A DNA stretch of 63,131 nt, the filler included, from Octopus bimaculoides (Eukaryota): assembly GCF_001194135.2 (NCBI RefSeq). It is 4 parts of 4 records of this genome, joined end to end, with 100 filler letters (N's around TTAATTAATTAA, not from the genome) between each part and the next. Parts side by side here need not be neighbours in the genome. Positions count along the whole stretch, not along the records: positions 1 to 17,394 come from NC_068986.1; 3 more parts are not named here. One strand, written 5' to 3'. Positions within the stretch are counted from its first letter, which is position 1; the number at the start of each line of letters is the position of its first letter. Position numbers and translations under genes: made by a program. Below the pieces are notes generated by a model. The model worked only from the letters and a program-made list of their open reading frames with translations. It was not told the DNA's origin and searched no databases. Positions 1 to 17,394 of this stretch are shown here, piece after piece.

Positions 1-240
1 AAAAAAAAAAAAAATTTTTTTACTCAGCATTCGCAGCATACAGTATGCAGCAGATAACATTTTTTTCAAGTAAGAGAAATACTGCTTGATATTAAGGAAT
101 ACTGTCAAGATAAACTTTTTAACATTTACTTCCTGTATGGGAAAGTAAATGCAAAGCAACATATGTTGTTACAGGAATAATTTTATATTTTCAATTTATT
201 TAGCTGGTCAAATACACTAGATAATTGACTTTAGCTATCA

Positions 241-453
<213 letters not shown>

Positions 454-546
454 TTAACAATCTACAAGAAAATAAGGAACCAGTATAAATGTGAACATAT
501 AAAGATTAAAAAAAAAAAAAAAAAAGCAAATTACTATGAAATTTAC

Positions 547-729
547 CTGATTAAGATCAGCAAGAGGCTCATCATCTTGAACCAACATCTGTGAAAACTG
601 AAGTCCTTGTTCAGGGTTCATGCGCATTATGTTCCGCAATAAAAAGATATAGTCTGGTGTGTAACCCACTTTTTTGGCATAAAGGACTATCTTTTGGAAT
701 TGTCCTGTTTCAGCAAAACATTGGATCAC
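547..729 (-). CDS. CLTC: Clathrin heavy chain exon ([27 protein letters not shown]...EPLADLNQ), 183 nt
   Basis: AG at 731-730, GTAAAT donor after 547. Confidence 0.97.
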
Positions 730-1073
730 CTAAAAGAGAAAATTAAACTCTTACAGCAAATAGTCATTTAATACTTAGATCTTTCATAGATGAAACTTAT
801 GAAATAATTAATGTAATCATTACACTTTCAAGTAACAGTTAAGGTTGTTTTATTCCTACCCATTTCAATCCTTATATTTGAAAATGAATTCAACAGCATT
901 TCACTAGTGAGGAGTAGTTGATGTTTAGCCCCACACCATCCCAAAACAAAGTCATATAAATCAAAATCATTCCAGCATTGACAATCCAGACTTTCTCAGC
1001 CATGGCATACCTTGGACATTACCATTGAATATCTCCTCCTTTAAGATGACAGGGTGAAATTTGAAGGAGATTA

Positions 1074-1247
<174 letters not shown>

Positions 1248-1286
1248 TTATATGCATATACATTAAAAATTTAATATTCTGAACTA

Positions 1287-1637
<351 letters not shown>

Positions 1638-2532
1638 TTATAAAATAAACGTATAACCAATACACCTACTCCATTTAAAAAATGCTGTCCCTTAAATTCA
1701 TGAGAAAGAACAACTCTTTTTAGAGAAAAATTTTTTTTTAAATGCAACAGTTTTACTTTTTCAATTATAAAGGGGACTATCTATAGAAAGGTACATTTCT
1801 TCAATCTCAAGTGTAAGTTTACAAACATAGGCATTCTGAGTAGCTTTTCTTTTTAATAATAATAATGATTAAACTTCACAAATTTAACTTTTGCTAACAT
1901 GTCCTTACTCTAGCTATTATTAAACTTTCACAGCATCCACCTCCTTTGCTAATTAGGCCACCTAGGTAAAAGGTACTTGTACTGCTTCTAGCAAATGCAA
2001 GCATTTGAAAGAATATATTTCATGAGCGTTTTTACTGTTTAAAACACCTGTACATCTACCACATACACAATGCTTTTCTGCCACCACTGCTCAGAACTGT
2101 GAGCAAGTGTCTTTTGTTGTAACCCTGGGCTAACCAAAGCTTTGTGAGTGGATTTAATAAATGAAAACTCAAAGAAGCCCATCATGTGTGTGTGTGTGTG
2201 TGTGTGTGTGTTCTCTTGTCTTGACAAAATATGATTATATATAAGCATCACTCTCATACAAGTGATGTTCATTTCAAGTCTTCCAAGAAAAACTAGTCTA
2301 GTTATGGGGAAATAATACTCTGCTTGGAAACAAGCAAGGGTTGACAAGAGGAAGGGCATGCAGCTGTAGAATGTCTGCCTCAGAAAATTTCATTTGACCC
2401 ATGCAAATATGGGAAAGTAGATGTTAAACAACGACAATGAAGAACTACATTGAAATACGTTTCTGTATATTTCTAATGTAACAAGTATTTTCTGAGTCCT
2501 ATAAATACAGATTAAAACAATGAGAAACTTAC

Positions 2533-2730
2533 TTTTGGTGCTCCAGCAGCAGCCTTAGCTGCTTCTGCATACTGTCCATTCTGGAAGAGGTTATTGAACT
2601 TGCGAACAAAGAGATCTTCTGCACCTGGCAAGTTGCAACGAGATGCTAAGCGCAAAGCAAGATCAGGATTTTGTAAAGTTGTTGTGATGTACTGAACAAC
2701 ATTATCTTCTTCAATGCTCACAGATAAAAC
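2533..2730 (-). CDS. CLTC: Clathrin heavy chain exon ([29 protein letters not shown]...AAAGAPK), 198 nt
   Basis: AG at 2732-2731, GTAAGT donor after 2533; linker-region sequence of CHC. Confidence 0.97.
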
Positions 2731-3139
2731 CTAGAAAATAGAATATTTTCCAAGTGACAAAGAAAAAAACAAAAATAAACAAAATAACCCAAATAAAACA
2801 AACACACACAGCTTAAAATGCAATTAACAACTGTTAATTACTTAATAGTTTAGAAATTATTGAATAAGAATAATCATATGTCAAGCATTTTGCCCAGACA
2901 ATTTTTTCATTCAGAAAGTAGTATACTGATCCAACAAATCAGTAATGCAGTAAGAAATAAATCTTCCAAGGTCTGCAATGATGGTGTATCTAATATACAC
3001 AAATGGCTATGAAATGTAAGAACTAGTTAAGATGTGCCCATATCAAAAGCCAACTCAACAAAAATAATAGTAGCAAAAACACTAGGATCAGTTCTGTGAA
3101 CACAGCTCTAAATGAGCAAGATATAGGAGAATGAAATTT

Positions 3140-3318
3140 GCACCCACTACACTCTCGGAGTGGTTGGTGTTAGGAAGGGCATCCAGCTGTAGAAACTCTG
3201 TCAAATCAGATTGGAGCCTGTTGTAGCCATCTGGTTTCACAAGTCCTCAGTCAAATTGTCCAACGCATGCTTGCATGGAAAGCAGCCGTTAAACGACGAC
3301 GACGATGATGATGATGAG
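3140..3318 (+). mobile_element. Short retroelement 3' end/SINE (AGGAAGGGCATCCAGCTGTAGAAAC...GTTAAACGAC) with (GAT)n tail; a related fragment lies at about 2330-2440
   Basis: The motif recurs at 2345-2370 and in reverse in the 40425-40640 repeats; (GAC/GAT)n tail at 3295-3318. Confidence 0.55.
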
Positions 3319-4097
3319 AGATGACATCAAAATAAGAATTATTGAAAAGATAAATTAGTCAATTAAAAAAATTACTAGTTGAAACACACAGCAATTATTA
3401 AATATTCTGAGCGAGAGTCATTAAATCACAACCAAATTTGGGCATCACCTCCAAGGGTTTTATCAAGTATATAAATGCTAGTATCATCATCAGTACTTTG
3501 GTAGTTTACTGTTACCAAAAGAACGAAAGGGAAAGTTGTCTTGTGTGAGATTTGAACTCTGAACTTAAAGGATTTTATCTTCGACCATGATTATTATGAG
3601 AAAATTGTATAAATCTACATTTATTTATTGCAAGCTAATCTGGATAAAAAAGAAAACCCCAAAGCTATACAATCAACATATGTCATTGTATAATTTTCTG
3701 TATGTTACTATGCAAAAAGTATTTACTTCAGACGTAAAAGAAAATGTAGGCAACTGAATGAGAGAGAGAGAGAGACAAAGAAAGAGAGAATGAAGAGAGT
3801 TGTTTATTGCAAACTAATCTGGATAAAAAAACCTTAAACATAAAAGAAAATGTGAGAAACAAAATGAGAGACACACACACACACGGAATAAGAAAGTCTT
3901 AGGAAAGCTGAAGTTTATGTGGTCAAGTACTCTCATTTACAAGGAGTAGTGGGTTGTCCTACTCTAAATCAATTTTTTCTCAACATGACTAAGCATGTTT
4001 ACTTAGACACTAAATTATCAAATACGATGTGTGGTGAAAGCTGTGAAAAATACAAGTAATTTTGCAAATATAGTGGGTAAAAAAAAAACAAGCCTAC

Positions 4098-4271
4098 CTG
4101 TCCCTTTCTGTTTACACCAATGATTCCATTAGTGGGCTCATGTGGAGCAGTTACAAAAATGGTATCACCACTGATCCTGTTCATGTAAATACATGTTGCA
4201 GTTTCTATGTCATAGAGATGTATGTAGCCATATTTGGTGATTAGAAATATCACATTATGTTTATTGCTTGT
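4098..4271 (-). CDS. CLTC: Clathrin heavy chain exon ([34 protein letters not shown]...GVNRKGQ), 174 nt
   Basis: AG at 4273-4272, GTAGGC donor after 4098; overlaps ORF 3999..4253. Confidence 0.97.
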
Positions 4272-5331
4272 CTAAAACAGATAAAAATTTACATTAGTAA
4301 TTGACATTGCACCATCTTTCTTGGTTTTTGTTTTTAAATTTTTGTTATACAATCTACTTAGAAACAAGGGGGCAGTCACAATTAAATTAAAACAAGTTTT
4401 TTTTTTTCTTTTTAGGTTCCAGTCACTGAATCCTCACCAACCTTCGAATATTTTAGTCGATCATGTCTGTACTACAGCATGTTATTAGGTAATTATTTTA
4501 TTAGTCACATAAGAGAAAATAAAAGGAGTTGATAGGTTTCAAAGGGATGTAATTAAGATCAAGACCAAAGCTTCAAGTATTTTTGATCAATGCAATAATT
4601 CCAATAAAATTTCCTTTTGTGAAACTTGCTGCACACACACAATCAAACCAGAACCAGATTGCTGAGAAGTGAACTTCTCAACCACACAGCCATGCATGAA
4701 CATCTGTCCACTGTTCAACTGGAAGGTAATNNNNNNNNNNAAAAAAAAAAAAAAAAAAGTGAATCTCCAGGATTCAGAAATTCAGTATTTAATTTCAAAT
4801 AGTAATAATTTTCATTCACTTGAACATTTTACCTCTTTCAATTGAATGCTGCTACTTCTAGTCTTCACTCCAATATGCAAATAATATTCATTAGTCTTTA
4901 TTGAAAACATGATTTAATGGAGACCTGATGAGGTGGTCTCAACAGTAAGATAGACACATACCAAGGATACACAACTCCAACACAACACCTTTACTTATCA
5001 CACAGCTGAAGCCTTCACCACAACCATTCTTAAGTCAAATAGCTGAACTGAAAATTAAATCCCCAAAGCAAGGCACTTTTTTTTTTAGGACTTCTCACCC
5101 AACAAACTTCACCCGATTCTTACTATTCAGAATTGCAACACAGTAAAACCTTACACTGGTCAAGTTAAGCATTAAAACCATATTAACCTTGGCTTTAAAA
5201 AAAAAAAAAAATTGTTACTTAAAATATTTCATTTTTGTATTTGGTCTGTGAGATTGATGTGAACTCGTGTTGAAACAAACTTTGCTGCATCTTTAGGGGG
5301 TCTTTATGCCAATAACAACACACTAGTTGAA

Positions 5332-5561
5332 TTTCACTGCTTTACTATTAGTCAGTTGGTTAGTTAGTTATTTAACCAACTTATTGCTTGCTTAATCAGT
5401 TGGCTAATCAATCAAACAGCTGTTTGCTAAAGTCCTTTCGTTACTATTCACGACCTCATCAAGGACACCCTCTCTCCCCCAAGTCTCCACAAATCTCAAA
5501 AATAAGTAATAGATTAGCTGATTAAGTAACTAACCAACTGACTAATAATAAAGGAGTGAAA
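5332..5561. mobile_element. MITE-like inverted repeat in a clathrin intron (38-bp arms)
   Basis: Arm 5332-5369 matches the reverse complement of 5524-5561 with about 3 mismatches. Confidence 0.65.
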
Positions 5562-5807
5562 CTTACACAGGGTGTTTATTTATTATTGTCATAATGATCC
5601 TACCAAGATACAGCATTTGTTATTTAAACAATTTTATCTTATTTAAATTATAAATACATTTATGCAAAGCTCTTGGCTTTTAGTTTCCAATAAAAATATT
5701 AGCCTACATGTTACAAATGATAAATGAAATATAGAAAGGAAGAAAGAAAAAAAAAAATCAGTTCACAATTTCCAAGATATCTTAACAGTATATAATAACA
5801 GCATTAC

Positions 5808-5921
5808 CTGCATAGCAACAGGAAAGTCATTCTGGGCTTCAGGAGGAAAGAAAACGTCAACAGCTTTCTTTGTAAATGGTGAGTTCCCTTGAGGTGGCTG
5901 ACCGACTTCAATGATATGTAG
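5808..5921 (-). CDS. CLTC: Clathrin heavy chain exon ([38 protein letters not shown]), 114 nt
   Basis: Not in the ORF track (no ATG); read manually. AG at 5923-5922, GTAATG donor after 5808; hallmark [18 protein letters not shown] motif. Confidence 0.97.
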
Positions 5922-6682
5922 CTATATGAAATAGAACAAACAAGCACATCATTAATAAAATATGAACAATGAACACAATCAAGTACATGCCCTTTGGAAT
6001 TATTTCTGATGAAGACTAGAAATCTGAATTGAGAGATATTAACTTATATTTGTAATGGCTGATCTATGTACAAGACTAATATTTAAAAAAATTCTTGTTA
6101 TTTAATGAACAACAGGAAAAACTAGTCTTTAAATATAAATATAACTAAAAATTAGAAATCCTACAAATTTGACTTGTGTTCGAGATTTAGCTTTATGTTA
6201 ACAAGTGGAACTTTCAGTACATTACATAGATATTTTAGAAAATAGTTATATTTAAAAGTGAGGTTATTTATTTTTCATTGAATTTCTGAGTCCATCTCAT
6301 GCAAACAACTGAAGATGATGATACTGTCATTTGAGATACACTCAACATTTTTCTTCACTGTTTAAAGACAGTTATCTTAAGACAAGAAGTTTTCCAGAAC
6401 AAGAGTCAGAAATTAACAATGTAAATTATAATTCAGTAAAATATGCAGAATTTCCATATGTAAACATAATTGCAATGTAATTCTCTAAAAGGAAAACCAT
6501 TTTACCACAGCAATTGACTTTACCTGATTAACCAAATTAACACAAAGTATGAAATTAAGAATGTGCCAGGAGAGTATTTTTAAATACACTTTCTTAATGT
6601 TTAGTATTGAGAAATCATGTAATTCAATTTTGACATAAGAAATGTTTTTAAATGTAACCAAATATATATTTTTTTTTTTTAC

Positions 6683-6844
6683 CTTTCCTCCCTGTGCTCC
6701 TCTGACAGCAAAACAAAACAACGTAGAAAGAGCTTGGTTACCATCCATTTTAAATTGGGCAAATGCAGCTGCATGGCCTTCTATTGGCTGACTTACTTTC
6801 CTCTCCATTGAATAAAGTTGCATGGCTCCAACTACACGGTTTTG
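6683..6844 (-). CDS. CLTC: Clathrin heavy chain exon ([31 protein letters not shown]...RGAQGGK), 162 nt
   Basis: Acceptor ttttctag at 6845-6846, donor GTAAAA at 6682-6677; translation matches the CHC terminal-domain propeller. Confidence 0.97.
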
Positions 6845-6892
6845 CTAGAAAATGAAAACAAAATTACAGATATTAGGAAAAATACTAAGTTA

Positions 6893-6933
<41 letters not shown>

Positions 6934-8879
6934 AGAATATTTATGAATATGCAAAGAAATTTAGGAAAGCATATTTAGAAAGTTGAGCTGATTTTGCAAT
7001 ATTTGCAATATTGAATTGCCAGCTTATAAGAGGGATGGGAGTGGAAAAGCACCCTAGCCTTCAGATTTGTTTATGAAAGCTTAATTGAAAGAAAAAAAAT
7101 TCATACCACTTAATAACCAGGCTGCTAGAGTCTTACTAACATTAAGAGATAGGGAAGGGGATAGTTACAATAATATTTATTCCGTCTAGTAGTAGACAGT
7201 TTAAAATTATAAATGCCTTGATAGAGTTAATATTGATATCTTCACTAGGAGAATAAGCGTTGGAAATTGCAATTTTTGGAAAATAGCAATCATTAGAAAA
7301 TAATTTAAACTGTATTTTTAATATAGTTATAAAGCAAATGAAGCTTTATCTTTATAATTTTTGAATTTCCAATTGAATTAGCTTGATCATTTACAAAATT
7401 TGGTTGGTATAAATGTTAGACAACAGAAATCAAGATTAATAGGCATAATAAAGAAAACCTGACATACAAATCACAAATAGTTTGCCAATTCAGATAACGA
7501 AAAAAAAGTAAAATGTAGAGGTAGAGTGTAGAAAGAGACATATTTCTCTTTAAATTAAAAGCTTAAAGCTTGTTAGTCATGTGATATTTTATGACAAGCA
7601 ACAGTACTTGTAGAAAACCAACTAATCCTTCAGCAAAACAAGCTTGTCAATAAACAAACTTGGTATAGAAAAAGAAATAAAAAGAGTATGTTCTGAGACC
7701 TAAGTGGTTGATAGACAGAAAGTGAAACAATATCACAGAAAAACTTACATACAAAAACTACATTGGTCATCTAATATGAATCTGACAAAATATGGAACAC
7801 CTAATTTAAAGGACAAAGTAATTAGAAGATAAATTTAATACATTTCATTTATAAATGAAATAATTTGTCATGAGCAGAAGTTACTAAATATCAAGCGTAG
7901 GGTTTGATAAAAGAATCTATTTTGGATGTTTGTTAATGTATGCCCAAACAAAATAACAAGATTGTCTGCATATTTCACAATAGCAATAATTACACTTAAT
8001 GTAACCCTCATTCATCAGAGTATATAAACTAACAAACATTTAACCGATTATTGCTTCAGACAAGATACCTGACTAATTTTGGAAAGAGTAAAGCTGAATG
8101 ATTCAAACACCAGTACATAATTTAGTGGGATAAATGAATCACAAAAACTAATTCAAAATGAAATGAAATCATGATATTAACATATTAATAAAGTATAACA
8201 ATAGAAATCTTTTCATAATTGTATGCATCCCTATATTCTATACCAATGAAGCTAAAATATGCTAGTTGTCAAATCTACAAGGTAATTATAATTATAAAAA
8301 AAAGAAGAAAAAAACCCTGGTAATGAATATTGTTAATGAGGAGTCTAAATTGTCTTAGTTGAAGAAATCGTAAGCTTGAAATCAAATTCAGAACAATTAA
8401 TTTCTTAAGTTTTCAAAATGAATTATAAAGTCAAATGCATGTAACAATAAAAATATTAAATCTAGATTGGTAAAAACTAAGGTATACTATTTACTGCTTC
8501 TATTGTAAATAATCTTGAATTATAGCACTTAGCACTGCAAATTTCCAATATCCATTGTTCTATTCAATTAGAAGTGTAAGTACACAAAAAATAGTTTGCA
8601 TAACTGAAAATTTGAATATTGGATAACAATATGATCAAAGTCATAGAAATAATTCAATATTGGAGGAATTTTATCCAATAATAATTGCTTTCTAGTGTTT
8701 GAAGTCATTTAGTGTCATTCTTTTAATGTTTGGTAAACTCTTGTGACAACTAAATAAAATCTATCATACTTATTTGTGTGATTCTTCAAAACCAACACAT
8801 ACTTTAAAAACCTAACAAAATCTCTTCAAAAAAGTGATAAAAATCTAATAGCGTAAGCTTTAAGATACAACAATCTGAA

Positions 8880-10480
8880 AGCTAGTGAAATGATTCCACT
8901 GAAATCATCTTCAACTGTTATTTACACCCCCACCATCCCAACACCTGCAAGACAACTATCAAGAAAGCAAAGAATGATGAAAGCCTTCATGCATCAGTTT
9001 GCAAGCTTTTGCTCTCTAAACTACTAACAATGCACAGGAATCCTCCTATGAAAACAGCTTAGAAGGTTGTAATGTTACGGTTGATATAATCACATTCACT
9101 GCTCATTTTGCCATCAACACCATTGTACAAATACATAATCCCTACAACTTTTTCATTTTATGCAATTTCACCAAATGCAAAAATATCCCTGATCATTCCA
9201 ACTCAAATGGTTTTCAACTCCAGGATCCATTCCAATCAACAGAACACTAAAATATGTTCCATTCAGAATATCTAACTCTATTGCCCTCTAAAGGTTCAAA
9301 AGGTGATGTCGAGTCATAAATCTCTTTCATCACCTAAATTTCCTCTCCTTTTTTACTAATTCCTTTAACCATTTCCATAGAGATAGATCTACAGGAGATT
9401 TATTCTCATATGCCACACTGCAATGCTCTCTCTCCCTTCGAGAACTTTGGCAAAAACAATATTGTCCTCTACATTAGCAAAGCCTTTAATGTGTCTGGTA
9501 TGAAAACCATCTTCACTTAACTACTAGCTTGTTGATTCTATCCATCTCACTCCTCAGACTAGAAGTTGCTGGTCAAACTGTTTCCATTAAAGGATGCTCT
9601 GACAATGTGTGTGTGAGAGAGAGAGAGAGCAACAGAGAATATCAATTCGAAATATGGTTTCTCACACCCTTCCCTTCTCTACATTAATGACCTTGCTGCC
9701 ACTTCTAACAACACAGTCAATATCATTTACCATTTCATTTCTGTTAAACTTCAGACAAGCTCCATTACATACAACTGACACCAGACAAACTGCCTTCATG
9801 AACAAGAACTTGAAAACAGTCCCCTATGGGAAAATGATAACTCGGTCTATTTGCACAGTATCAAGATAATCACCACGAAAAAATCCTGTCTATATATAAA
9901 AAACATACTAAGCTTCTAAATTTGCTTCAAAGGCTAAGTTTCTAAAGCTTGATTTTTCAAGGCAATTGCTTCTAGACAGCCTTACTAAAACCACTTCTTA
10001 AAAAGTAGTCAGAAAATACTTGTCCTGGTCCCTCTACAATAGGCTCCTTTGGTGAATTTCATGCAAATATGGCATGCTATTATTGCACAAATACAAATGT
10101 TTAAGACCATGTCCAAAGCAGTCTTTTGGCTACTATACAAAGTTTTACTTAACACTTCAATTGTTGGCTTGCTGTTTCTTCACTGCTTCTACAGTTGAAC
10201 TCAGGCCTACACCTGACATATTAGAACTACTTCACCCTTTCCCATTACCCCTACAATGTCTCACTCCCAAGATCAAGCACTAAACACTTTTAGACAATCT
10301 TTCCTGTACAGGACTAAATTTTCCCAAGAATTCTACAATTGCCCTTTTTTGATTATTAATCTTCAACTGCATCCATCCCTCATATATACTGTGAGAAATA
10401 TGGATACCATTGAGTTTCACACAGGAAAAAATTTTCTGTGTCTACATTTACACACACAATTAAGTAAAGAAAAAATTAAT
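8880..10480 (+). mobile_element. Decayed LINE reverse-transcriptase remnant (CR1/L2/Jockey-like), antisense to clathrin
   Basis: ISKAFNV (cf. DISKAFD) at 9473-9493 and LYINDL at 9677-9694 in the expected order; many stops and frameshifts; boundaries approximate. Confidence 0.7.
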
Positions 10481-13400
10481 AAATAAATAATTCAAGTGAA
10501 TGAAATAAAAATGATACTTATAAAGAAAGACTCATTCTATTATTTTATAATTTGTTGGAAAATGAACAGATTACATTTTTCTTATATTTAAGTTTAAACT
10601 GTTTCCAATAAATACTTGAAATGTAGACACTGCCGACAGTTAAGTTTTTGCAAAGTGGAAAAAGTGGAAGATAATCAGAATTAAAAAATATGAAACAATA
10701 CAATGTAATTATCAATGTCTCTTGCAACAGAAAAATAATCTAGATAATATATTTGAGAGTGTTAGGCAATTGCATTGCACTGCCAGCAAAGTATATCCCA
10801 AAATAAAACTGAAGCCTTTGTTAGAGTAATTTAATGGAAAAGTTAAGGAAACCCAATTTAGATCTTTTAACTCTTTTCCAATCTGATAAATATTCTTTAT
10901 TTAGATTTTCACAAGTCATTTCAACTATAGAAACAAAGGGCAAGGCCAGGTATATATAATATAGTGGGCAGGGTGTATTTGTATACACACACACACACAC
11001 ACATACATACTCTGCCCATATTACTTGAAAAACAAAGACTGGCAACAAGAAGTGCATATGGTTATAGAAAACCTGCCTCAAGAAGTTTTATCCATCCCAT
11101 GCCAACATTAAAAAAAAAATGGATGTAAAAGTGAGGCATATATTCACAACTAAATTATTACACTATAATGTATGTTAACATTGCTACAGTTGCAAACCAT
11201 TTTTGTAGAATTAAATAGCAACAGTTCAGTAGCCATGGTCTGAAATGACCAATTTTACAGATAAGTTTCAATTGATTCTTGTAAAATGAGCAGGTTAAAT
11301 TTTATTTCAAATGACTAGAATTTGAACAATGAAAGAAAAAACTTTCAATGTTTGGAAATAAGATATGCACAACATATGAAGGAGTAAAGGTGCAAGACAT
11401 TTGAATAAACTAAATAATATTGAAAATACAACTATAAGTGAGAGAAAAAGAGGGTGATAATAAATATGGAATAAAATCAGACAGGTAAAATAAAGCTACT
11501 TGACTGAAAAAGAGGAACGAAAAACCCAGCTGTAAAATACCCATGTAAATTTTCTTAACCCGTTCGATAAAAAATCAAAGTATTGAATAGCAATAAACTA
11601 ATGAAAGGAGAACTAACAAAGGATAAATTTTAAAATAGGATAGAACAACACATGTATGAATATATGTACAGTGATTGTCTCTCCCCTTTTGACTGCACTC
11701 CTTTAGTAATTTTTTTTTTTTTTTTTCAGATAAGAGGAAAAAATTATCAAGGATGATAGGGATTTAGTAAGAGTAATAAGTATTAATCCAAATGACTTTG
11801 ATTTAACTAATCCACAGAAATATCAAACTTTTCAAGGTTTATTAGAAATATGGCTGAATAAAAATCAAAGGAGAAGTTTGTCTTTTTAGTTTCATTAGGG
11901 GCTAAATATTCCTCTGAATAAAGATTCCAGCAGATGGAGCTTCATAAAAGGAGGTATTAATAAGTATTAATAAGTATTAAAAGATCTATATTTAAAAATC
12001 TTGAATTGTAGTATTCATCTGAGTTTATTACTAAAAGAACTTATTTTTAGTGTGCATAGGCATTAACTACATTGGAAGAATTTGCTAGAAAAATAGTCAC
12101 TGAATTTCAGGTAACACTGAGAAAATTGAAAGTTAAATTTTTAGATTTACATTAAATATAGGTGTATGCCGTATGTGTGTGTAAATCTAGCAAAATACAA
12201 AATAAATTTTTAGAATCATTGTATGGCTTGAACGAAATGGATTAATTCATGAGGATAAAATCAAGAATAAATGATAACGTAATCTGATTTTGACAAGAGT
12301 GCACATTGAGACAAGTGGAAATACACATCAAACAATTATATGAACATCCATTAATTTATTTTAAACTTATGCACCAGTCCTTAAAGCATGCTTTTAGTAT
12401 TGACAATAAAGCTCATAAAGAGCACAAATGAAACTGGTGTGACAATACTCAACAACATAGGAGAGTGGTGTAAGAGAAGACTATTGTTCAGAGCTTCTAT
12501 GTTAGCAAGACACCCATGCATCAGAACACTGTCCACAGAATATTGGCACATTAACAATTCTGTAATTACTAAATGATTTATTACAATTGTACAAGAAAAT
12601 TTGAAGATTTTAAAATATGTTTCAACAATTTTGATGTTTAAAAAAAAAATAAATAAACATGTTCCTACAAGGTGGTTGAAGAGATTAAAAAAAAGATCTT
12701 TTTACAATAAATTTTCTTTACAATTTAATAATTTCAAAATTATTTAAAATTATAGTGATAGTTTTTACCAAGTGCTGGCCAAGAAGCATGGACATGCTTT
12801 CCAACTGGATCTATACTAATGGCATGCACTAACTAGCTAACCCAAACATGCTTCATATTCAGCCTTTCCAGAAACTCAAAATTAAGGCTTTCATTTTAGA
12901 ATTTGAGCTCTCTATGCAGAGAAAAAAAATACTCGATATTTTATATATTTTCTGTGATTTTCTTGAAACTATTTAAAAAAAAATATAATTACTAATTGAG
13001 AGGTGATATGGTATTGTAAATTGAATGTGTTGTGCTTGCATGCATACACACAAGAACTGTTCAATCAGTTAAATTTATTTCTATTCCATAACAAGAACGA
13101 AAAAAAACTATTATTTTATATATTTTAGCCAAATGGAAGTTATTTCTATGTCAAATTTTTTTTTAAATGAAACCGGTTGTGAAAATATTAGAGATATAGG
13201 GAATATATGTAAAATTCTAATGTTTGCTAGATTAAATCAAAAGCCTACGTACTGTAGAGAAAAAAAAAATTAAAATGAGAATTTTAAAAATCAGTTTTAT
13301 TTTTAAAGATTAAGTCTTACTTTTTAATCACTAATATTTTAAACTTTATTTAAAAAAAAGTTGTATCATGTTTTTGAAGAATTAAAGATTAAAAAATAGA

Positions 13401-14649
13401 ACCAGTTTATCTTAAAATATCATTTTAGAGAATAATAACATAATATGATTGGTGCAAATGTGTTTTTATCAATGAAGCCTGTAAAATAACAAAATTCAAA
13501 TTTTTGCCAACATATATTTAGCATGTGTGTATATTAGTTAACATAAGTATGTTTTGTATATGAAATGCATAGTCAGCTAAAGAGAAGCAGCCTAATCAAA
13601 AGTATTTTATGTTGAAGTCAAATTATTTATTATTTTCATTGCAATTTGATTTTTATACTATTCATGATAAAAATCAAATTGTAATGAAGATGATAAATTT
13701 ATAAAGAATTGCAAAAAAATGTTTAAATGTTCTTTTTCTAAGACAAGCCATAAAACTTCTTTAGATAACATTTTTTATAAACATATAAGAAAATAGCTCC
13801 TTTTCTTTCATCTTATAAGGAAAAAAGAAACAATCCAAAATGCCTGAAAAAGACAGCTAAGATAAAAACTGAGAGAGTAATTAAAAATAAAAATACAAAA
13901 GAAATATTGTCAAAGAATTTGAGAAAATAACAGCCTCAGTAAAAATGTCTTCTAACTTTATTTACATAATCAGATCCAACATCTGACTATTTACTGTTTG
14001 GGCGAGAATTATTTTTGATAATACTTGACATCATGAAGAGTTCTTTAGGTAGTAGTAAACAGTAAATGATAAAAAAAACAAAACCTAATTATATAACATA
14101 CCACAGAGTATATGAATTCTATAAGCATATATATTTAGACATGCTGCCCTGTCTCAGGGTTATAACCTCAACATTACTGAATATGGTTATTCAGAATTGA
14201 TATGCTCTATGGGGTTACATAATTTTCTTCTCACTGCTAGACAATTAATGCTGAATTTTCATGGTTGACAACAACAATGAAATTAGACCCAAGCTAGATG
14301 AAAATTGTGACCACCCTTTGTCTGACTCCTTGTTTCTTCCAAGGGTTTATAAACAATTTTCTATTTTTGAGTTGGGTTAATTACTTATCACATGGAATTT
14401 AGATCTTAAGTAAGTAGTAGCACTAATTATTTCATTAGTTACCTATTGTACAATATACTACATATACAGATGAAATTAATACAGATTCTTTTCTGATGAT
14501 GATGAAATGAAGTTGATATTAGTAAGTTTAACATTCATGTATGAAGAGCAATCAATAAACATTGGGCAGCTGACAGAAAATGACATCAAAGTTTTTTCTA
14601 AAACAGTAAATGATTTCTAAGACTGGAATGCTAGGAAAAAAAAAATGTA

Positions 14650-15950
14650 ATTAAATTGTGAAAATTTCACAAATTGAGATTTAATTGAATGTTCACTAGA
14701 GTTGTAATATTTTTCTATCAAAGATCAAGCTACATAAGGGATACATCAGCTCGATATTTAAGAGAAAACAAGAAAGTTATGTTCACAGCTTTCTCAAAGA
14801 ATTACCATGACCTCAGTGGAAGCAATTCTAGAAGAAAATTAAAATTAGTTAGCAGACTTTGTTCAGAACTTACCACCTCATGATGGTGCTTACCATTACT
14901 AATATATCAAGTTTGTAAAGACAAACAGAAGTTAGCCCAGGATAATGGTCGGTTAGTTCAAAGTGAAAGCAAATACAATGTCTTTAACAGAAGACAAGAA
15001 AATTAGTTATAAGGAGGCAAAAAGCAAGCGAGATTTAAGCTCAATATATTTTTTTATGAATAATAAAAGGGACTAAACAGCTCAACAATAAAGAATAAAT
15101 GATTTTTTGAAAGATTAACAGAATAAAATTAAAAGGAAAAATTTGGCTAATAATCTGAACTGCTTCATCAGAAATTTGTCAAAGAGAAATCTAATGAGCC
15201 GATCTGAGGTTTACCACTGTTCAGATCTTTCAAGATACATTTAATTGGTTCAAAAGGTTGCAGTTTTCTGCACTTGAGCAGTGCAAAAACACAGGAGCTA
15301 TACAGGGCTTGAACTAAAAGCTTAAGAGGCTTACAACAAATAACATCCAAATAGCTACGAGGGTAAGGAAGGAATGGTTAGTATTGGTGTAAACATAAAT
15401 CTCCATTCCCATGAATTAGGTGGAGATTTTTATAAACGCAGATGGTTTAAGGAATAGATTTCAGTGTCATCCACGAAATGCTCTAATTAATTTCATATGA
15501 TTTATGTTTGATAATTGGATCACAAAGACCATCTTCTTCAATGCTTGGGATCAGGTATAAATCAAATGCAAACAATTTATGAAAATAAAGAACTTATTTA
15601 TTGTTTGGTAATTGAAATTATACTAAATGATCTATTTTCAATAAACATTTCCATTATGTTCAGAATGTGGACCTTTATGTGAAAGAGTCTTAACTCATAG
15701 AATTAAACTCAATTTACAAACCTCTACCCACCTTGCAGTTTAGAAGTGCTAATAATGGAAAGTAATATTTAAACAAACTTTCATTATTTCATGCAAAAAT
15801 CACATCACATTTTAGAATGGAAAGGCTGCTGGCCACAATGTCATATCATGTGGATTCATTAAGCATTCATTGGATAACAAACTTTGATAACAAACCAACA
15901 GGGGAAAATATATAAAACTATTTTTTTTATGGATTACAAGGCATTCGAAC
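14650..15950 (+). mobile_element. Probable highly decayed LINE 5' part (ORF1-like, then endonuclease-like remnants)
   Basis: Purine/Lys-rich coding-like sequence with weak resemblance to ORF1 C-terminal patterns (YKEAK..RD...IYFF.N); no intact frame. Confidence 0.3.
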
Positions 15951-16916
15951 TAAGTAGATAATCTAGCTACTAGATATGCTGGTTTCAAGGTATGTCAAAA
16001 ATAGATGTAATGCTTACAAGACTTTTATTTAGTTATAAAATATCTAATGTACTTTTAAGAGTAAGGAAAAAAATTAATAAATAAAGGGAAAAACTATGTT
16101 TAGATCTTAGTGTTATACAAACATTTAACTAAAGAATTCTATAGGATGCAAAATATTTTAAAAACTACTCTTCATTTAAAGGAAACTGGAAATGCTGAGA
16201 AAATTTATAATTTTATATTTTTGAATGGTTTCATAACTAAATTATAAGCAAAACATTACAAATACATTGAAATATAGACTTAAAAGTATAAAAACTATAA
16301 TAATAGATCTGATCTCAAGCATTTTTAGATTTAATAAACTCTAATTTATGTAAAAGAAAAAAATTTAAATGATATCAAAAGGGAATTGAAAGGCAAAATT
16401 AAGCAAAAAGTTGGTAATACAGGGAAACTAAATTAAAAGAAAAAAAAAATTGAGGCTTAAAAATAGAACTTAAATTATTTTAAATGAATAACTGCCTAAA
16501 CACATTACTCATAGTTTCTTGCACAACCTTGTGGCATTGTCTTTACTTTCAAAAAGTTGCCAACATATCTCCAGTGGCAAATGTTAGTTGAATTCATTAA
16601 AATAACATTTAATCTTAATGGCAGTAGTAAATTTTCTTTCAAAACCAAGATATTTCAAAATTTCATCTTGAATTAGTGCTATCTATTATTGTAAATTTAT
16701 GTAATACTCAATGTAAATATATTGAAAGACTAATGTGCATTTGACATAAAATATCTATCATTTTTTTTCATTAATTTAGTATGGGATTATAAACATCAGC
16801 TTGAACATAGCTGGAGTGATACCAAATTTCATAGCTAGGACAGGTAAGGTAGGTAGGCATCCTTTGGAAAAAAGAAGGCTTTGGAAGGCTCCCCTGTCCA
16901 ACCTCCTCATATTTAC

Positions 16917-16955
16917 CTGAGTTGGTGGTGTCACAGCAGAGTTTTCAGCATTTAC
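16917..16955 (-). CDS. Candidate 39-nt cassette microexon of clathrin heavy chain (VNAENSAVTPPTQ)
   Basis: Minus strand reads ttctgttatttgcttttag|GTAAATGCTGAAAACTCTGCTGTGACACCACCAACTCAG|gtaaat. Only frame 0 is stop-free, matching the phase-0 intron upstream of the 6844 exon. GC-richer than its flanks. No transcript evidence available. Confidence 0.55.
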
Positions 16956-17394
16956 CTAAAAGCAAATAACAGAACTCCAATTTCTTATAAATCTTTAGAT
17001 ATTTGTTTTAAATTAGTTTAACGAAGTACAGTGATCAATCCTTCACTTATAAGATAGCTCTAATGATGTGAATTGGCTGTTTAAAAAAAAAAAAACATCA
17101 ACATGTAATAAAGTTAATTGTTTTAATCTGCAGCTATTTGAGAGCTTCTTTTTGCTATATGATTAAGTAAAAATTAAATTTTCTAAATTAACAGTTAATA
17201 ATATAAACTTAATTTACAATAAATGAAAAATAACATTTAATGAATATAATATAAAAGAAACTTTAAAATTAAAACTACAGTTTAAAACAAAATATAATTC
17301 AGAACTGATTAAATTATAAAATGTCTCAATGCACTCCCCATTTCTGATTATTAAAAGAAATAGTGAAAGCATCCCTTGAGCAACTCTAAACCAT

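What the first reader, a model, noticed from the sequence alone, without database searches (positions are those of the whole stretch)
16917..16955. Hidden 39-nt in-frame microexon that would insert 13 aa into the clathrin terminal domain beside the W-box site
Seen: strong acceptor (ttatttgcttttag), strong donor (CAG|gtaaat), length divisible by 3, and only frame 0 open (the other two frames hit TAA/TGA at once). That is exactly the phase of the intron preceding the QNRVVG exon. A UGC sits at -9..-7 from the 3' splice site. Established: in human CHC this intron falls at Q173/Q174, three residues after I170, which lines the W-box pocket (F27/Q152/I154/I170), and near the blade 4-5 arrestin-binding groove. 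UGC near the 3' splice site is the signature of SRRM4/eMIC-regulated neural microexons. Inference: a possibly neural, lineage-specific CHC isoform (...ISAQ-VNAENSAVTPPTQ-QNRVV...) that retunes adaptor binding, with a TPP possible proline-directed phosphosite. I do not know of such an insert in vertebrate CHC.
Basis: partly seen in the sequence, partly recalled or inferred. Interest (0 to 1): 0.8.

Follow-up and report, generated by a model that had tools for sequence, protein, structure and literature searches.

The report
Exon-like 39-nt element in clathrin intron
A 39-base stretch deep in a long intron of an animal clathrin heavy-chain gene looks on paper like a small in-frame exon, but nothing I could reach shows it is ever spliced in. 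Chance, or a recursive-splicing stepping stone, explains it about as well as a new clathrin isoform.

Summary
On the minus strand, ttatttgcttttag|GTAAATGCTGAAAACTCTGCTGTGACACCACCAACTCAG|gtaaat (16955->16917) is 39 nt and open only in frame 0 (VNAENSAVTPPTQ). It lies 10,072 nt upstream of the QNRVVG exon, which is CHC residue 174 with a phase-0 start. UGC sits at -9..-7.

Its use as an exon could not be tested.

Chance is not excluded. An in-frame, open micro-pseudoexon this strong appears in 4-6% of shuffled introns, and in 50-60% at the strength of the weakest real sites. Equally strong decoys exist in the window.

The eMIC/SRRM4 reading meets 1 of 4 sequence features: the AG-exclusion zone is only 17 nt, it holds no CUAAY branch site, and there is no long UCUC tract.

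That is the anatomy of a recursive-splicing ratchet point with a short RS-exon, found in 0.8-1.7% of shuffles.

My estimates:
- unused pseudo-exon: about 0.5
- recursive-splice element: about 0.2
- expressed 13-aa microexon: about 0.2, of which neural eMIC-type is at most 0.05

Junction reads, or an alignment with the 81%-identical sister species, would settle it.

The parts
16917..16955 (-). 39-nt exon-like segment GTAAATGCTGAAAACTCTGCTGTGACACCACCAACTCAG. It is open only in frame 0 (VNAENSAVTPPTQ), is 46% G+C, and occurs once in the window.
16956..16974 (-). 3' splice-site look-alike ttctgttatttgcttttag. 14 of 20 upstream bases are pyrimidines. The next AG upstream is at -21/-20, so the AG-exclusion zone is only 17 nt, with no CTAAY/TTAAY branch motif inside it. 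The nearest CTAAT is at -61.
16962..16964 (-). UGC at -9..-7 from the putative 3' splice site. This is the only eMIC-type feature present.
   Evidence: PMC8797185
16950..16955 (-). GTAAAT directly after the AG, giving a tandem acceptor|donor (ratchet-point-like). If an upstream exon ending ...CAG were joined here, a 5' splice site CAG|GTAAAT would be regenerated.
   Evidence: PMC8605326
16911..16916 (-). Donor look-alike CAG|gtaaat at the 3' end of the segment. It is identical to two real donors of this gene.
16790..16916 (-). G+C-rich flank (46-48% against about 22% around it) downstream of the putative donor. It holds a G-run (GGGG) and CU-rich stretches with two copies of TTCCAAAG. Frame 0 stays open to 16779, giving 59 codons in all. 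Several frames on both strands are open here, which is not coding-like.
6683..6844 (-). The next real CHC exon ([16 protein letters not shown]...GGK, residues 174-227), with a phase-0 start after ttttctag. It lies 10,072 nt downstream of the candidate.

Best explanation
This is most likely an intronic pseudo-exon. It is a pair of good splice-site look-alikes that arose, by chance or with a G+C-richer insert, in a long (>10.5 kb), AT-rich, U-rich intron of the clathrin heavy-chain gene. It is not part of the normal mRNA, or is used only at noise level. Because it happens to be 39 nt and open in frame 0, occasional inclusion would be harmless to the reading frame. Nothing available here shows selection on it.
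For: Chance rate:
- At thresholds equal to the weakest real sites of this gene, at least one in-frame, open pseudo-exon of 3-51, 3-100 or 3-300 nt appears in 52-62% of shuffled introns.
- At the candidate's own scores the rate is still 3.5-5.9%. A scan of many windows easily reaches that level.

Decoys:
- The simple site scores do not separate real exons from decoys here. Pairs at least as strong sit at 8944-8934, 1167-1011 and 3639-3449.
- The 8944 decoy is not conserved in the related species L001.

Weak 3' region:
- The AG-exclusion zone is only 17 nt and contains no CTAAY/TTAAY branch motif.
- Of the eight acceptor contexts compared, five have a longer zone and one has a TTAAT inside a zone of 16 nt. 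In the other two the script landed a few bases off the true acceptor.

No coding signal:
- The loop GISAQ|QNRVVG carries no insert in any CHC fragment recovered: 511 hits, 120 listed, 33 read.
- Two other animals with this intron (about 1 and 4.1 kb) have nothing resembling the peptide, and one animal lacks the intron.
- G+C islands are common in this gene's introns, with 9 non-exonic islands.
- Several frames on both strands are open across this island, as expected from composition rather than coding.
- No homologue of any frame was found.
Against: - The full architecture is rare in shuffles. An acceptor directly followed by a donor, plus a second strong donor within 100 nt, occurs in 0.8% of Markov shuffles and 1.7% of block-wise shuffles. 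With frame and openness added it is 0.05-0.13%. These thresholds are post hoc.
- The segment has the G+C content of real exons (46%), and the G+C island begins exactly at the putative acceptor.
- The donor is identical to real donors of the gene.
- It is the only in-frame, open pair at this strength in the intron, and none exists on the opposite strand.
Confidence: 0.5

Rival explanations
1. Recursive-splicing ratchet point with a short RS-exon. The spliceosome would define the 39-nt segment as an exon and join the upstream exon (...ISAQ, probably ending CAG) to it. That regenerates a 5' splice site CAG|GTAAAT at the junction. The regenerated site is then used to remove the 39 nt together with the remaining 10 kb, so the long intron leaves in two steps and the mature mRNA is unchanged.
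For: - Defining anatomy as described for Drosophila (PMC8605326): a tandem acceptor|donor, a short cryptic RS-exon of about 50 nt, a downstream donor, and a long intron.
- All are visible here: ttag|GTAAAT, 39 nt, CAG|GTAAAT, and an intron >10.5 kb.
- This architecture occurs in only 0.8-1.7% of shuffled introns.
- GTAAAT is a working donor in this gene, in 2 of 8 real donors.
- In two other animals the upstream exon ends CAG.
- In L005 the intron's own first 10 nt are GTAAATGCTG, identical to the start of the candidate.
Against: - A tandem AG|GT motif alone, at this strength, is expected 0.26 times per intron.
- The pyrimidine tract is short and lacks a branch motif. Fly ratchet points have very strong sites.
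- The donor lacks G at +5.
- Recursive splicing is described as confined to the longest 3% of introns in flies (PMC6110457), and the full length of this intron is unknown.
- Cryptic RS-exons are generally out of frame, whereas this one is in frame.
- The one literature search I ran on recursive splicing in molluscs was badly formed and says nothing either way.
- Conservation, the hallmark of the class, could not be tested.
Confidence: 0.2
2. A genuine alternatively included in-frame microexon. The 39 nt would be retained in some transcripts, by ordinary cassette splicing or as an expressed RS-exon like Ubx m1/m2. That inserts VNAENSAVTPPTQ between Q173 and Q174. From my memory of the fold, not tested here, this position is the b-c loop of blade 4 on the top face of the terminal-domain propeller, beside the W-box pocket. 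The insert would alter adaptor binding. The neural, SRRM4/eMIC-dependent version is a sub-case (at most 0.05).
For: - The length is a multiple of 3 and only the host frame is open. A random 39-mer of this composition has roughly a 0.13 chance of both (my estimate from base frequencies; compare).
- Site scores lie within the range of real sites and the G+C content is exon-like.
- The G+C-rich, G-run and CU-rich flank downstream could be a regulatory region.
- The two competing donors have the same hexamer. In the recursive model that predicts partial inclusion (PMC8605326).
- The insertion point maps next to I170 (W-box) and to N175/G179 of 'site 5' (PMC8805674; numbering).
- UGC is present at -9..-7.
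Against: - There is no transcript or protein evidence.
- Only 1 of 4 eMIC sequence features is met.
- The loop receiving the insert carries no insertion in any CHC fragment recovered. CHC is extremely constrained, so the prior for a 13-aa insert there is low.
- There is no similar exon in the other animals checked.
- A plain cassette exon has only about a 2% chance of starting with a good donor hexamer (my estimate from base frequencies).
Confidence: 0.2
3. The G+C-rich island (about 16780-16960) is a fragment of something else, such as a decayed mobile element or an exon of an antisense transcript. The sense-strand splice look-alikes would then be by-products.
For: - The island has sharp edges in a 22% G+C background.
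- The plus strand carries its own exon-like unit, ttcattaatttag|TATGGG...GGACAG|gtaaggtaggtagg (16780-16843). Its donor hexamer is the strongest among the AG|GT sites scored on either strand.
- Other G+C islands in the introns coincide with repeat-like structures, for example the inverted repeat 5317-5576.
Against: - There is no second copy in the window.
- There are no terminal repeats or target-site duplication and no tRNA-like or Rfam match.
- No protein similarity was found in any frame.
- No RNA structure signal was found on either strand.
Confidence: 0.07

Closest known systems
Drosophila intronic ratchet points with cryptic RS-exons (e.g. kuz, Bx; Joseph et al., PMC8605326)
   Same: A tandem acceptor|donor, a short exon (about 50 nt there, 39 nt here), a second donor just downstream, and a position deep in a long intron.
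   Different: - The fly sites have longer pyrimidine tracts and GTAAGT-type donors, and are ultraconserved.
- Their RS-exons are generally out of frame.
- Here the tract is short, the donor is GTAAAT, the exon is in frame, and neither conservation nor splicing intermediates could be examined.
Ultrabithorax microexons m1 and m2 (51 nt each; expressed RS-exons, cited in PMC8605326)
   Same: Frame-preserving microexons that begin with a donor sequence. Inclusion or skipping is decided by competition between the regenerated donor and the exon's own donor.
   Different: Ubx m1/m2 are experimentally shown and lie in a linker of a transcription factor. The element here is unproven and would fall inside a folded beta-propeller.
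eMIC/SRRM4-dependent neuronal microexons (PMC8797185)
   Same: It is at most 51 nt and frame-preserving, has UGC close to the 3' splice site, and sits in a membrane-trafficking gene.
   Different: It lacks the long AG-exclusion zone, the long UCUC-rich tract and the strong CUAAY branch site. Tissue specificity is unknown.
The known alternative exon of vertebrate CLTC near the trimerisation domain (PMC8925968; Moulay et al. 2020 cited there)
   Same: A short frame-preserving alternative exon in clathrin heavy chain that changes coat behaviour.
   Different: It lies at the opposite end of the protein, near the trimerisation domain rather than the terminal domain. It is regulated by PTBP1/QKI in muscle, and is documented at RNA and phenotype level.
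Ordinary intronic pseudo-exons / decoy exons
   Same: Good splice-site matches in a long intron without evidence of use. Equally strong decoys are present in the same window.
   Different: It is in frame, G+C-rich and starts with a donor. That combination is rare in shuffles (0.05-0.13%).

Membership tests
Frame-preserving cassette microexon | Length 3-51 nt, a multiple of 3, no stop in the host frame | tested here: met
   39 nt, frame 0 open, the other frames closed. Host phase 0 comes from the downstream exon and from the upstream exon of other species.
Frame-preserving cassette microexon | Functional 3' and 5' splice sites, including a usable branch point | tested here: inconclusive
   The PWM scores lie within the range of the gene's real sites. 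However, the AG-exclusion zone is only 17 nt, with no CTAAY/TTAAY motif inside it.
Frame-preserving cassette microexon | Inclusion in mature mRNA (junction reads, cDNA, protein) | not testable with these tools
   No insert-bearing protein was found among the hits. The collection holds no spliced CHC of this species, and the source genome is not on record.
Frame-preserving cassette microexon | Conservation of the exon and flanking intron in related species | not testable with these tools
   Contigs of the close relatives cover only window 6454-9183. Searches for the orthologous region failed. The peptide is absent from the distant taxa checked.
eMIC/SRRM4-dependent neural microexon | UGC motif close to the 3' splice site | tested here: met
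   UGC at -9..-7. However, 10% of arbitrary intronic AGs here have TGC at -15..-4.
eMIC/SRRM4-dependent neural microexon | Long AG-exclusion zone | tested here: not met
   17 nt. Five of the eight acceptor contexts compared have 30 to more than 78 nt.
eMIC/SRRM4-dependent neural microexon | Long polypyrimidine tract enriched in UCUC, and a strong CUAAY branch site | tested here: not met
   The tract is ttctgttatttgcttttag, with no UCUC run. The nearest CTAAT is at -61, with three AGs in between.
eMIC/SRRM4-dependent neural microexon | Neuron-specific inclusion that depends on Srrm234/eMIC | not testable with these tools
   No expression data could be reached.
Recursive splice site (ratchet point) with RS-exon | [quoted passage not shown] | tested here: met
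   ttatttgcttttAG|GTAAATGC. It ranks 5th of 49 AGGT sites on the sense strand, below three sites at real exon boundaries and one intronic site (1961). By chance 0.26 such sites are expected per intron.
Recursive splice site (ratchet point) with RS-exon | Short RS-exon closed by a downstream donor | tested here: met
   39 nt to CAG|GTAAAT. Motif plus donor within 100 nt occurs in 0.8-1.7% of shuffles.
Recursive splice site (ratchet point) with RS-exon | Location in a very long intron | tested here: inconclusive
   The intron is >10.5 kb, but its 5' end lies outside the piece. The same intron is 1-4 kb in two other animals.
Recursive splice site (ratchet point) with RS-exon | Regenerated donor stronger than the RS-exon donor (for skipping) | tested here: inconclusive
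   Both are GTAAAT. The exonic half of the regenerated site depends on the unseen upstream exon, which ends CAG in other species.
Recursive splice site (ratchet point) with RS-exon | Strong conservation of the acceptor|donor junction; ratchet junction, lariat or sawtooth reads | not testable with these tools
   No orthologous sequence and no RNA data could be reached.
Clathrin heavy chain gene (host) | Exons encoding the terminal domain and linker, collinear with solved CHC | tested here: met
   Eight exons cover residues 174-596. PDB CHC chains match at 174-324 with E about 1e-85.

The most novel reading that the evidence does not exclude
The 39 nt are an expressed recursive-type microexon in a non-insect invertebrate. 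Competition between two identical GTAAAT donors would decide whether 13 residues (VNAENSAVTPPTQ) are inserted between Q173 and Q174. From my memory of the propeller fold, that position is the blade-4 b-c loop at the rim of the W-box pocket of the clathrin terminal domain. The result would be a lineage-specific clathrin isoform with altered adaptor choice.
Probability: 0.15. Interest if true: 0.65.

Novelty: new member of a known kind. Interest (0 to 1): 0.3.

Why it matters
Clathrin heavy chain is one of the most conserved animal proteins. The only alternative exon of it that I found described lies near the trimerisation domain.

A regulated insert at the rim of the W-box pocket would be a new way to retune which adaptors clathrin binds. 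It would be testable with peptides and with the existing crystal forms.

If the element is instead a ratchet point, it would extend recursive splicing to another animal lineage with long introns.

If it is a decoy, which is my leading reading, it is ordinary. It then shows mainly that in-frame pseudo-exons with good sites are expected in AT-rich introns of this length.

Tried and rejected
Searches for the insert or its orthologue:
- Protein search with insert plus exon: 511 CHC hits, none with the insert. The hits are mostly single-exon ORF calls on genomic DNA, so the negative is weak.
- Six-frame ORFs of 16774-17021 and ORFs of 15171-17394, meant to fish orthologous contigs of relatives: no hits.
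- Profile-free search of the 59-codon frame against 1.84 billion representatives: only spurious hits to translated tandem repeats.
- Exact look-ups of four window ORFs: none on record, so neither the upstream exon nor the rest of the intron could be fetched.
- Metagenome DNA scans with a codon-degenerate pattern and with the junction 25-mer: nothing.

Related and distant species:
- Contigs of the related species, L001 (81% identical intron) and L002, stop far short of the candidate.
- Distant taxa L003-L005 have either no intron or a short intron, and no similar peptide.
- The 10-nt identity to the intron start of L005 does not extend further.

Other kinds of element:
- Rfam, tRNA, tandem-repeat, repeat and folding analyses found nothing at the site.
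- I considered a truncated CHC ending in the 59-codon frame as an alternative terminal exon and rejected it. It has no poly(A) signal and would break the propeller.

Literature and limits:
- The two-term search for microexon plus clathrin heavy chain returned 8 papers, which I judged from title and abstract. None concerns a terminal-domain insert.
- The cephalopod microexon search found nothing on clathrin, and the recursive-splicing search for molluscs was badly formed and uninformative. The run accessions are not in the paper library.
- The organism could not be named.
- Structure prediction with and without the insert was not possible, because the N-terminal 173 residues are not available from allowed sources.

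Full report
WHAT IS THERE

The piece (1-17394) carries part of a clathrin heavy-chain (CHC) gene on the minus strand. A tblastn probe with a from-memory human CLTC sequence, used only to place exons, finds eight exons for residues 174-596. They lie at 6844-6683, 5921-5808, about 4268-4098, 2730-2533, about 1613-1410, about 1241-1149, 729-547 and about 429-292.

A search of solved structures confirms the numbering independently. The first three exons align to residues 174-324 of mammalian CHC chains (1BPO, 1UTC, 1XI4 and others) at E about 1e-85.

The exon starting QNRVVG begins at 6844 with the whole codon CAA after ttttctag. No exon for residues below 174 is in the piece. The intron in front of it therefore runs from 6845 to beyond 17394 and is longer than 10.5 kb.

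THE OBSERVATION

On the minus strand, 16969->16911 reads ttatttgcttttag|GTAAATGCTGAAAACTCTGCTGTGACACCACCAACTCAG|gtaaat.

- It is 39 nt = 13 codons = VNAENSAVTPPTQ.
- Frames +1 and +2 close at once (TAA at base 2, TGA at base 9), and only frame 0 is open.
- UGC is at -9..-7.
- The donor CAG|GTAAAT is the same as two of the eight real donors in the window.
- With a generic splice PWM (frequencies from memory, background from the window), the acceptor scores 8.0 against 5.6-11.7 for real sites. The donor scores 8.4 against 5.8-11.6.
- The segment occurs once in the window and lies 10,072 nt upstream of the QNRVVG exon.

Phase 0 of the intron is inferred rather than seen, because the upstream exon is outside the piece. 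In two other animals that exon ends ...GISAQ on the whole codon CAG. ORF calls from many animals break at exactly this point.

IS IT MORE THAN CHANCE?

I scored every AG and GT on the sense strand of the 10.5-kb intron. I counted pairs of 3-51 nt that are in frame and open.

| Null model | Thresholds | Shuffled introns with at least one hit |
|---|---|---|
| First-order Markov shuffles | candidate's own scores (post hoc) | 3.5% |
| Block-wise shuffles keeping local composition | candidate's own scores (post hoc) | 5.9% |
| First-order Markov shuffles | weakest real sites of this gene | 52-62% |

- At its own thresholds the candidate is the only such pair on the sense strand, and the opposite strand has none.
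- Ranked by the weaker of the two site scores, the candidate is 9th on the sense strand.
- Decoys at least as strong exist at 8944-8934 (11 nt), 1167-1011 and 3639-3449. Only three of the eight real exons make the top 25. Site strength alone therefore does not tell real from false here.
- The 8944 decoy falls in the part of the intron covered by a related species and is not conserved there.

The segment begins with a donor consensus directly after the AG (ttag|GTAAAT). A tandem acceptor|donor, followed by a short exon and a second donor in a long intron, is the defining anatomy of a recursive-splicing ratchet point with its RS-exon (PMC8605326; PMC6110457).

- The tandem motif alone, at this strength, is expected 0.26 times per shuffled intron.
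- Together with a strong donor within 100 nt it occurs in 0.8% of Markov shuffles and 1.7% of block-wise shuffles.
- With frame and openness added it falls to 0.05-0.13%.

All these thresholds are post hoc, so they overstate the case. Even so, the combination is not common.

If the upstream exon ends CAG, as in other species, the regenerated site would be CAG|GTAAAT. That is the same hexamer as the RS-exon's own donor. In the published competition model, a tie predicts partial inclusion rather than clean skipping.

A curiosity: in one other animal (L005) the orthologous intron itself starts GTAAATGCTG, identical to the first 10 nt of the candidate. The similarity does not extend further.

THE NEURAL / eMIC INFERENCE

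eMIC-dependent exons are described as having four features: long AG-exclusion zones, UGC near the 3' splice site, long UCUC-rich pyrimidine tracts and strong CUAAY branch sites (PMC8797185).

- Here the AG-exclusion zone is 17 nt. Five of the eight acceptor contexts compared have 30 to more than 78 nt, and a sixth has a TTAAT inside a 16-nt zone. In the other two the script landed a few bases off the true acceptor.
- No CTAAY/TTAAY lies inside the zone. The nearest CTAAT is at -61, with AGs in between.
- The tract is short and has no UCUC run.
- A TGC at -15..-4 precedes 10% of arbitrary AGs in this intron.

One of four features is met, and it is the cheapest one. The weak branch region also lowers the odds that the acceptor works at all.

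SURROUNDINGS

The candidate opens a G+C-rich island, 46-48% against about 22% around it. The island runs to about 16790. Frame 0 stays open across all of it, 59 codons from 16955 to 16779.

- Five of the eight real exons show up as such islands, but so do nine intronic stretches.
- Several frames on both strands are open across this island, which points to composition rather than coding.
- The flank downstream of the putative donor holds a G-run and CU-rich stretches. These could be splicing-regulatory, or could mean nothing.
- On the plus strand the same island holds another exon-like unit, 16780-16843, with a very strong donor CAG|GTAAGG.
- No repeat copy, terminal repeat, tRNA-like or Rfam match, or RNA-structure signal was found.

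EVIDENCE FROM ELSEWHERE

- A search of the 5.8-billion-protein collection with insert plus exon gave 511 CHC hits, none with the insert. Those read are mostly single-exon ORF calls on genomic DNA. No spliced CHC of this species or its nearest relatives is among them, so this is a weak negative.
- The GISAQ|QNRVVG junction carries no insertion in any fragment recovered.
- Two close relatives exist only as contigs of about 2.7 kb. L001 is 81% identical over window 6454-9183, and L002 has 510 nt of the intron. Neither reaches the candidate.
- Attempts to fish the orthologous region by ORFs in all frames, by a full HMMER scan, by DNA patterns and by exact look-ups all failed.
- More distant animals either lack this intron (L003) or have it at about 1 kb and 4.1 kb without any similar peptide. 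If the exon is real, it is lineage-specific.

WHERE THE INSERT WOULD FALL

[quoted passage not shown] The arrestin site lies between blades 4 and 5 (W164, L183, R188, V190, Q192, I194 ...). A proposed fifth site includes N175 and G179 (PMC8805674).

From my memory of the fold this is the b-c loop of blade 4. That assignment was not tested here, because the N-terminal 173 residues could not be handed to the predictor.

The known alternative exon of vertebrate CLTC lies near the trimerisation domain, not here (PMC8925968).

WEIGHING

- For a plain microexon: a prior of about 1-2% per long intron, against a chance rate of 4-6%, gives roughly 10%.
- The donor-first start shifts weight towards a recursive-type element. 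However, the prior for recursive splicing in this unnamed lineage is unknown, and the site is only moderately strong.

| Reading | My estimate |
|---|---|
| Unused pseudo-exon | about 0.5 |
| Ratchet point with a mostly skipped RS-exon | about 0.2 |
| Expressed 13-aa microexon by either route (eMIC-type neural at most 0.05) | about 0.2 |
| By-product of a foreign fragment or an antisense exon | about 0.07 |

The sequence and the statistics are shown. Every statement about use is inferred.

VERDICT

The pattern is real and reasonably good, but its function is undemonstrated. Junction reads, or a single alignment with the 81%-identical sister species, would decide. Interest is modest (0.3) until then.

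Noticed in passing
window 16780-16843 (+ strand): A second exon-like unit lies on the opposite strand, inside the same G+C island: ttcattaatttag|TATGGG...GGACAG|gtaaggtaggtagg, 64 nt. Its donor hexamer is the strongest among the AG|GT sites scored on either strand. No protein similarity was found for its frame.
   Followed up: partly
window 13625-13698 (sense = minus strand): An AT-rich hairpin with 32-nt arms (91% complementary) and a 10-nt loop. It folds at -20.9 kcal/mol against -8.4 for shuffles (z = -5.4). It has a weak Rfam mir-737 match (38 bits, below the gathering score of 60). It could be an intronic miRNA-like hairpin or a small palindromic element.
   Followed up: partly
window 5317-5389 / 5504-5576: An inverted repeat with 73-nt arms (78% complementary) lies in the intron between the exons at 5808-5921 and 4098-4268. 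It gives weak MIR6135 hits on both strands and looks like a MITE-type element.
   Followed up: no
window 8934-8944 (minus strand): An 11-nt decoy, tcttgcag|GTGTTGGGATG|gtgggg, has splice-site scores above those of the candidate. Its donor is destroyed in the related species L001. This shows what a neutral decoy looks like at 81% identity.
   Followed up: yes
L005 5875-5900 versus window 16946-16955: In another animal the orthologous intron starts CAG|gtaaatgctg. That is identical to the first 10 nt of the candidate. The similarity stops there.
   Followed up: yes
L003 7072-7392 and 5890-6740: This species has no intron at Q173/Q174, with one exon running through ...LLLIGISAQQNRVVG.... Upstream it carries a tandem array of copies about 46 nt long of a CHC exon fragment (translating TVSVIH*SADYHWGMDGK).
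   Followed up: no
window 4731-4740 and 6894-6929: A run of 10 N (an assembly gap) lies in an intron. A 36-nt homopolymer (T on the sense strand) lies about 50 nt upstream of the QNRVVG acceptor.
   Followed up: no
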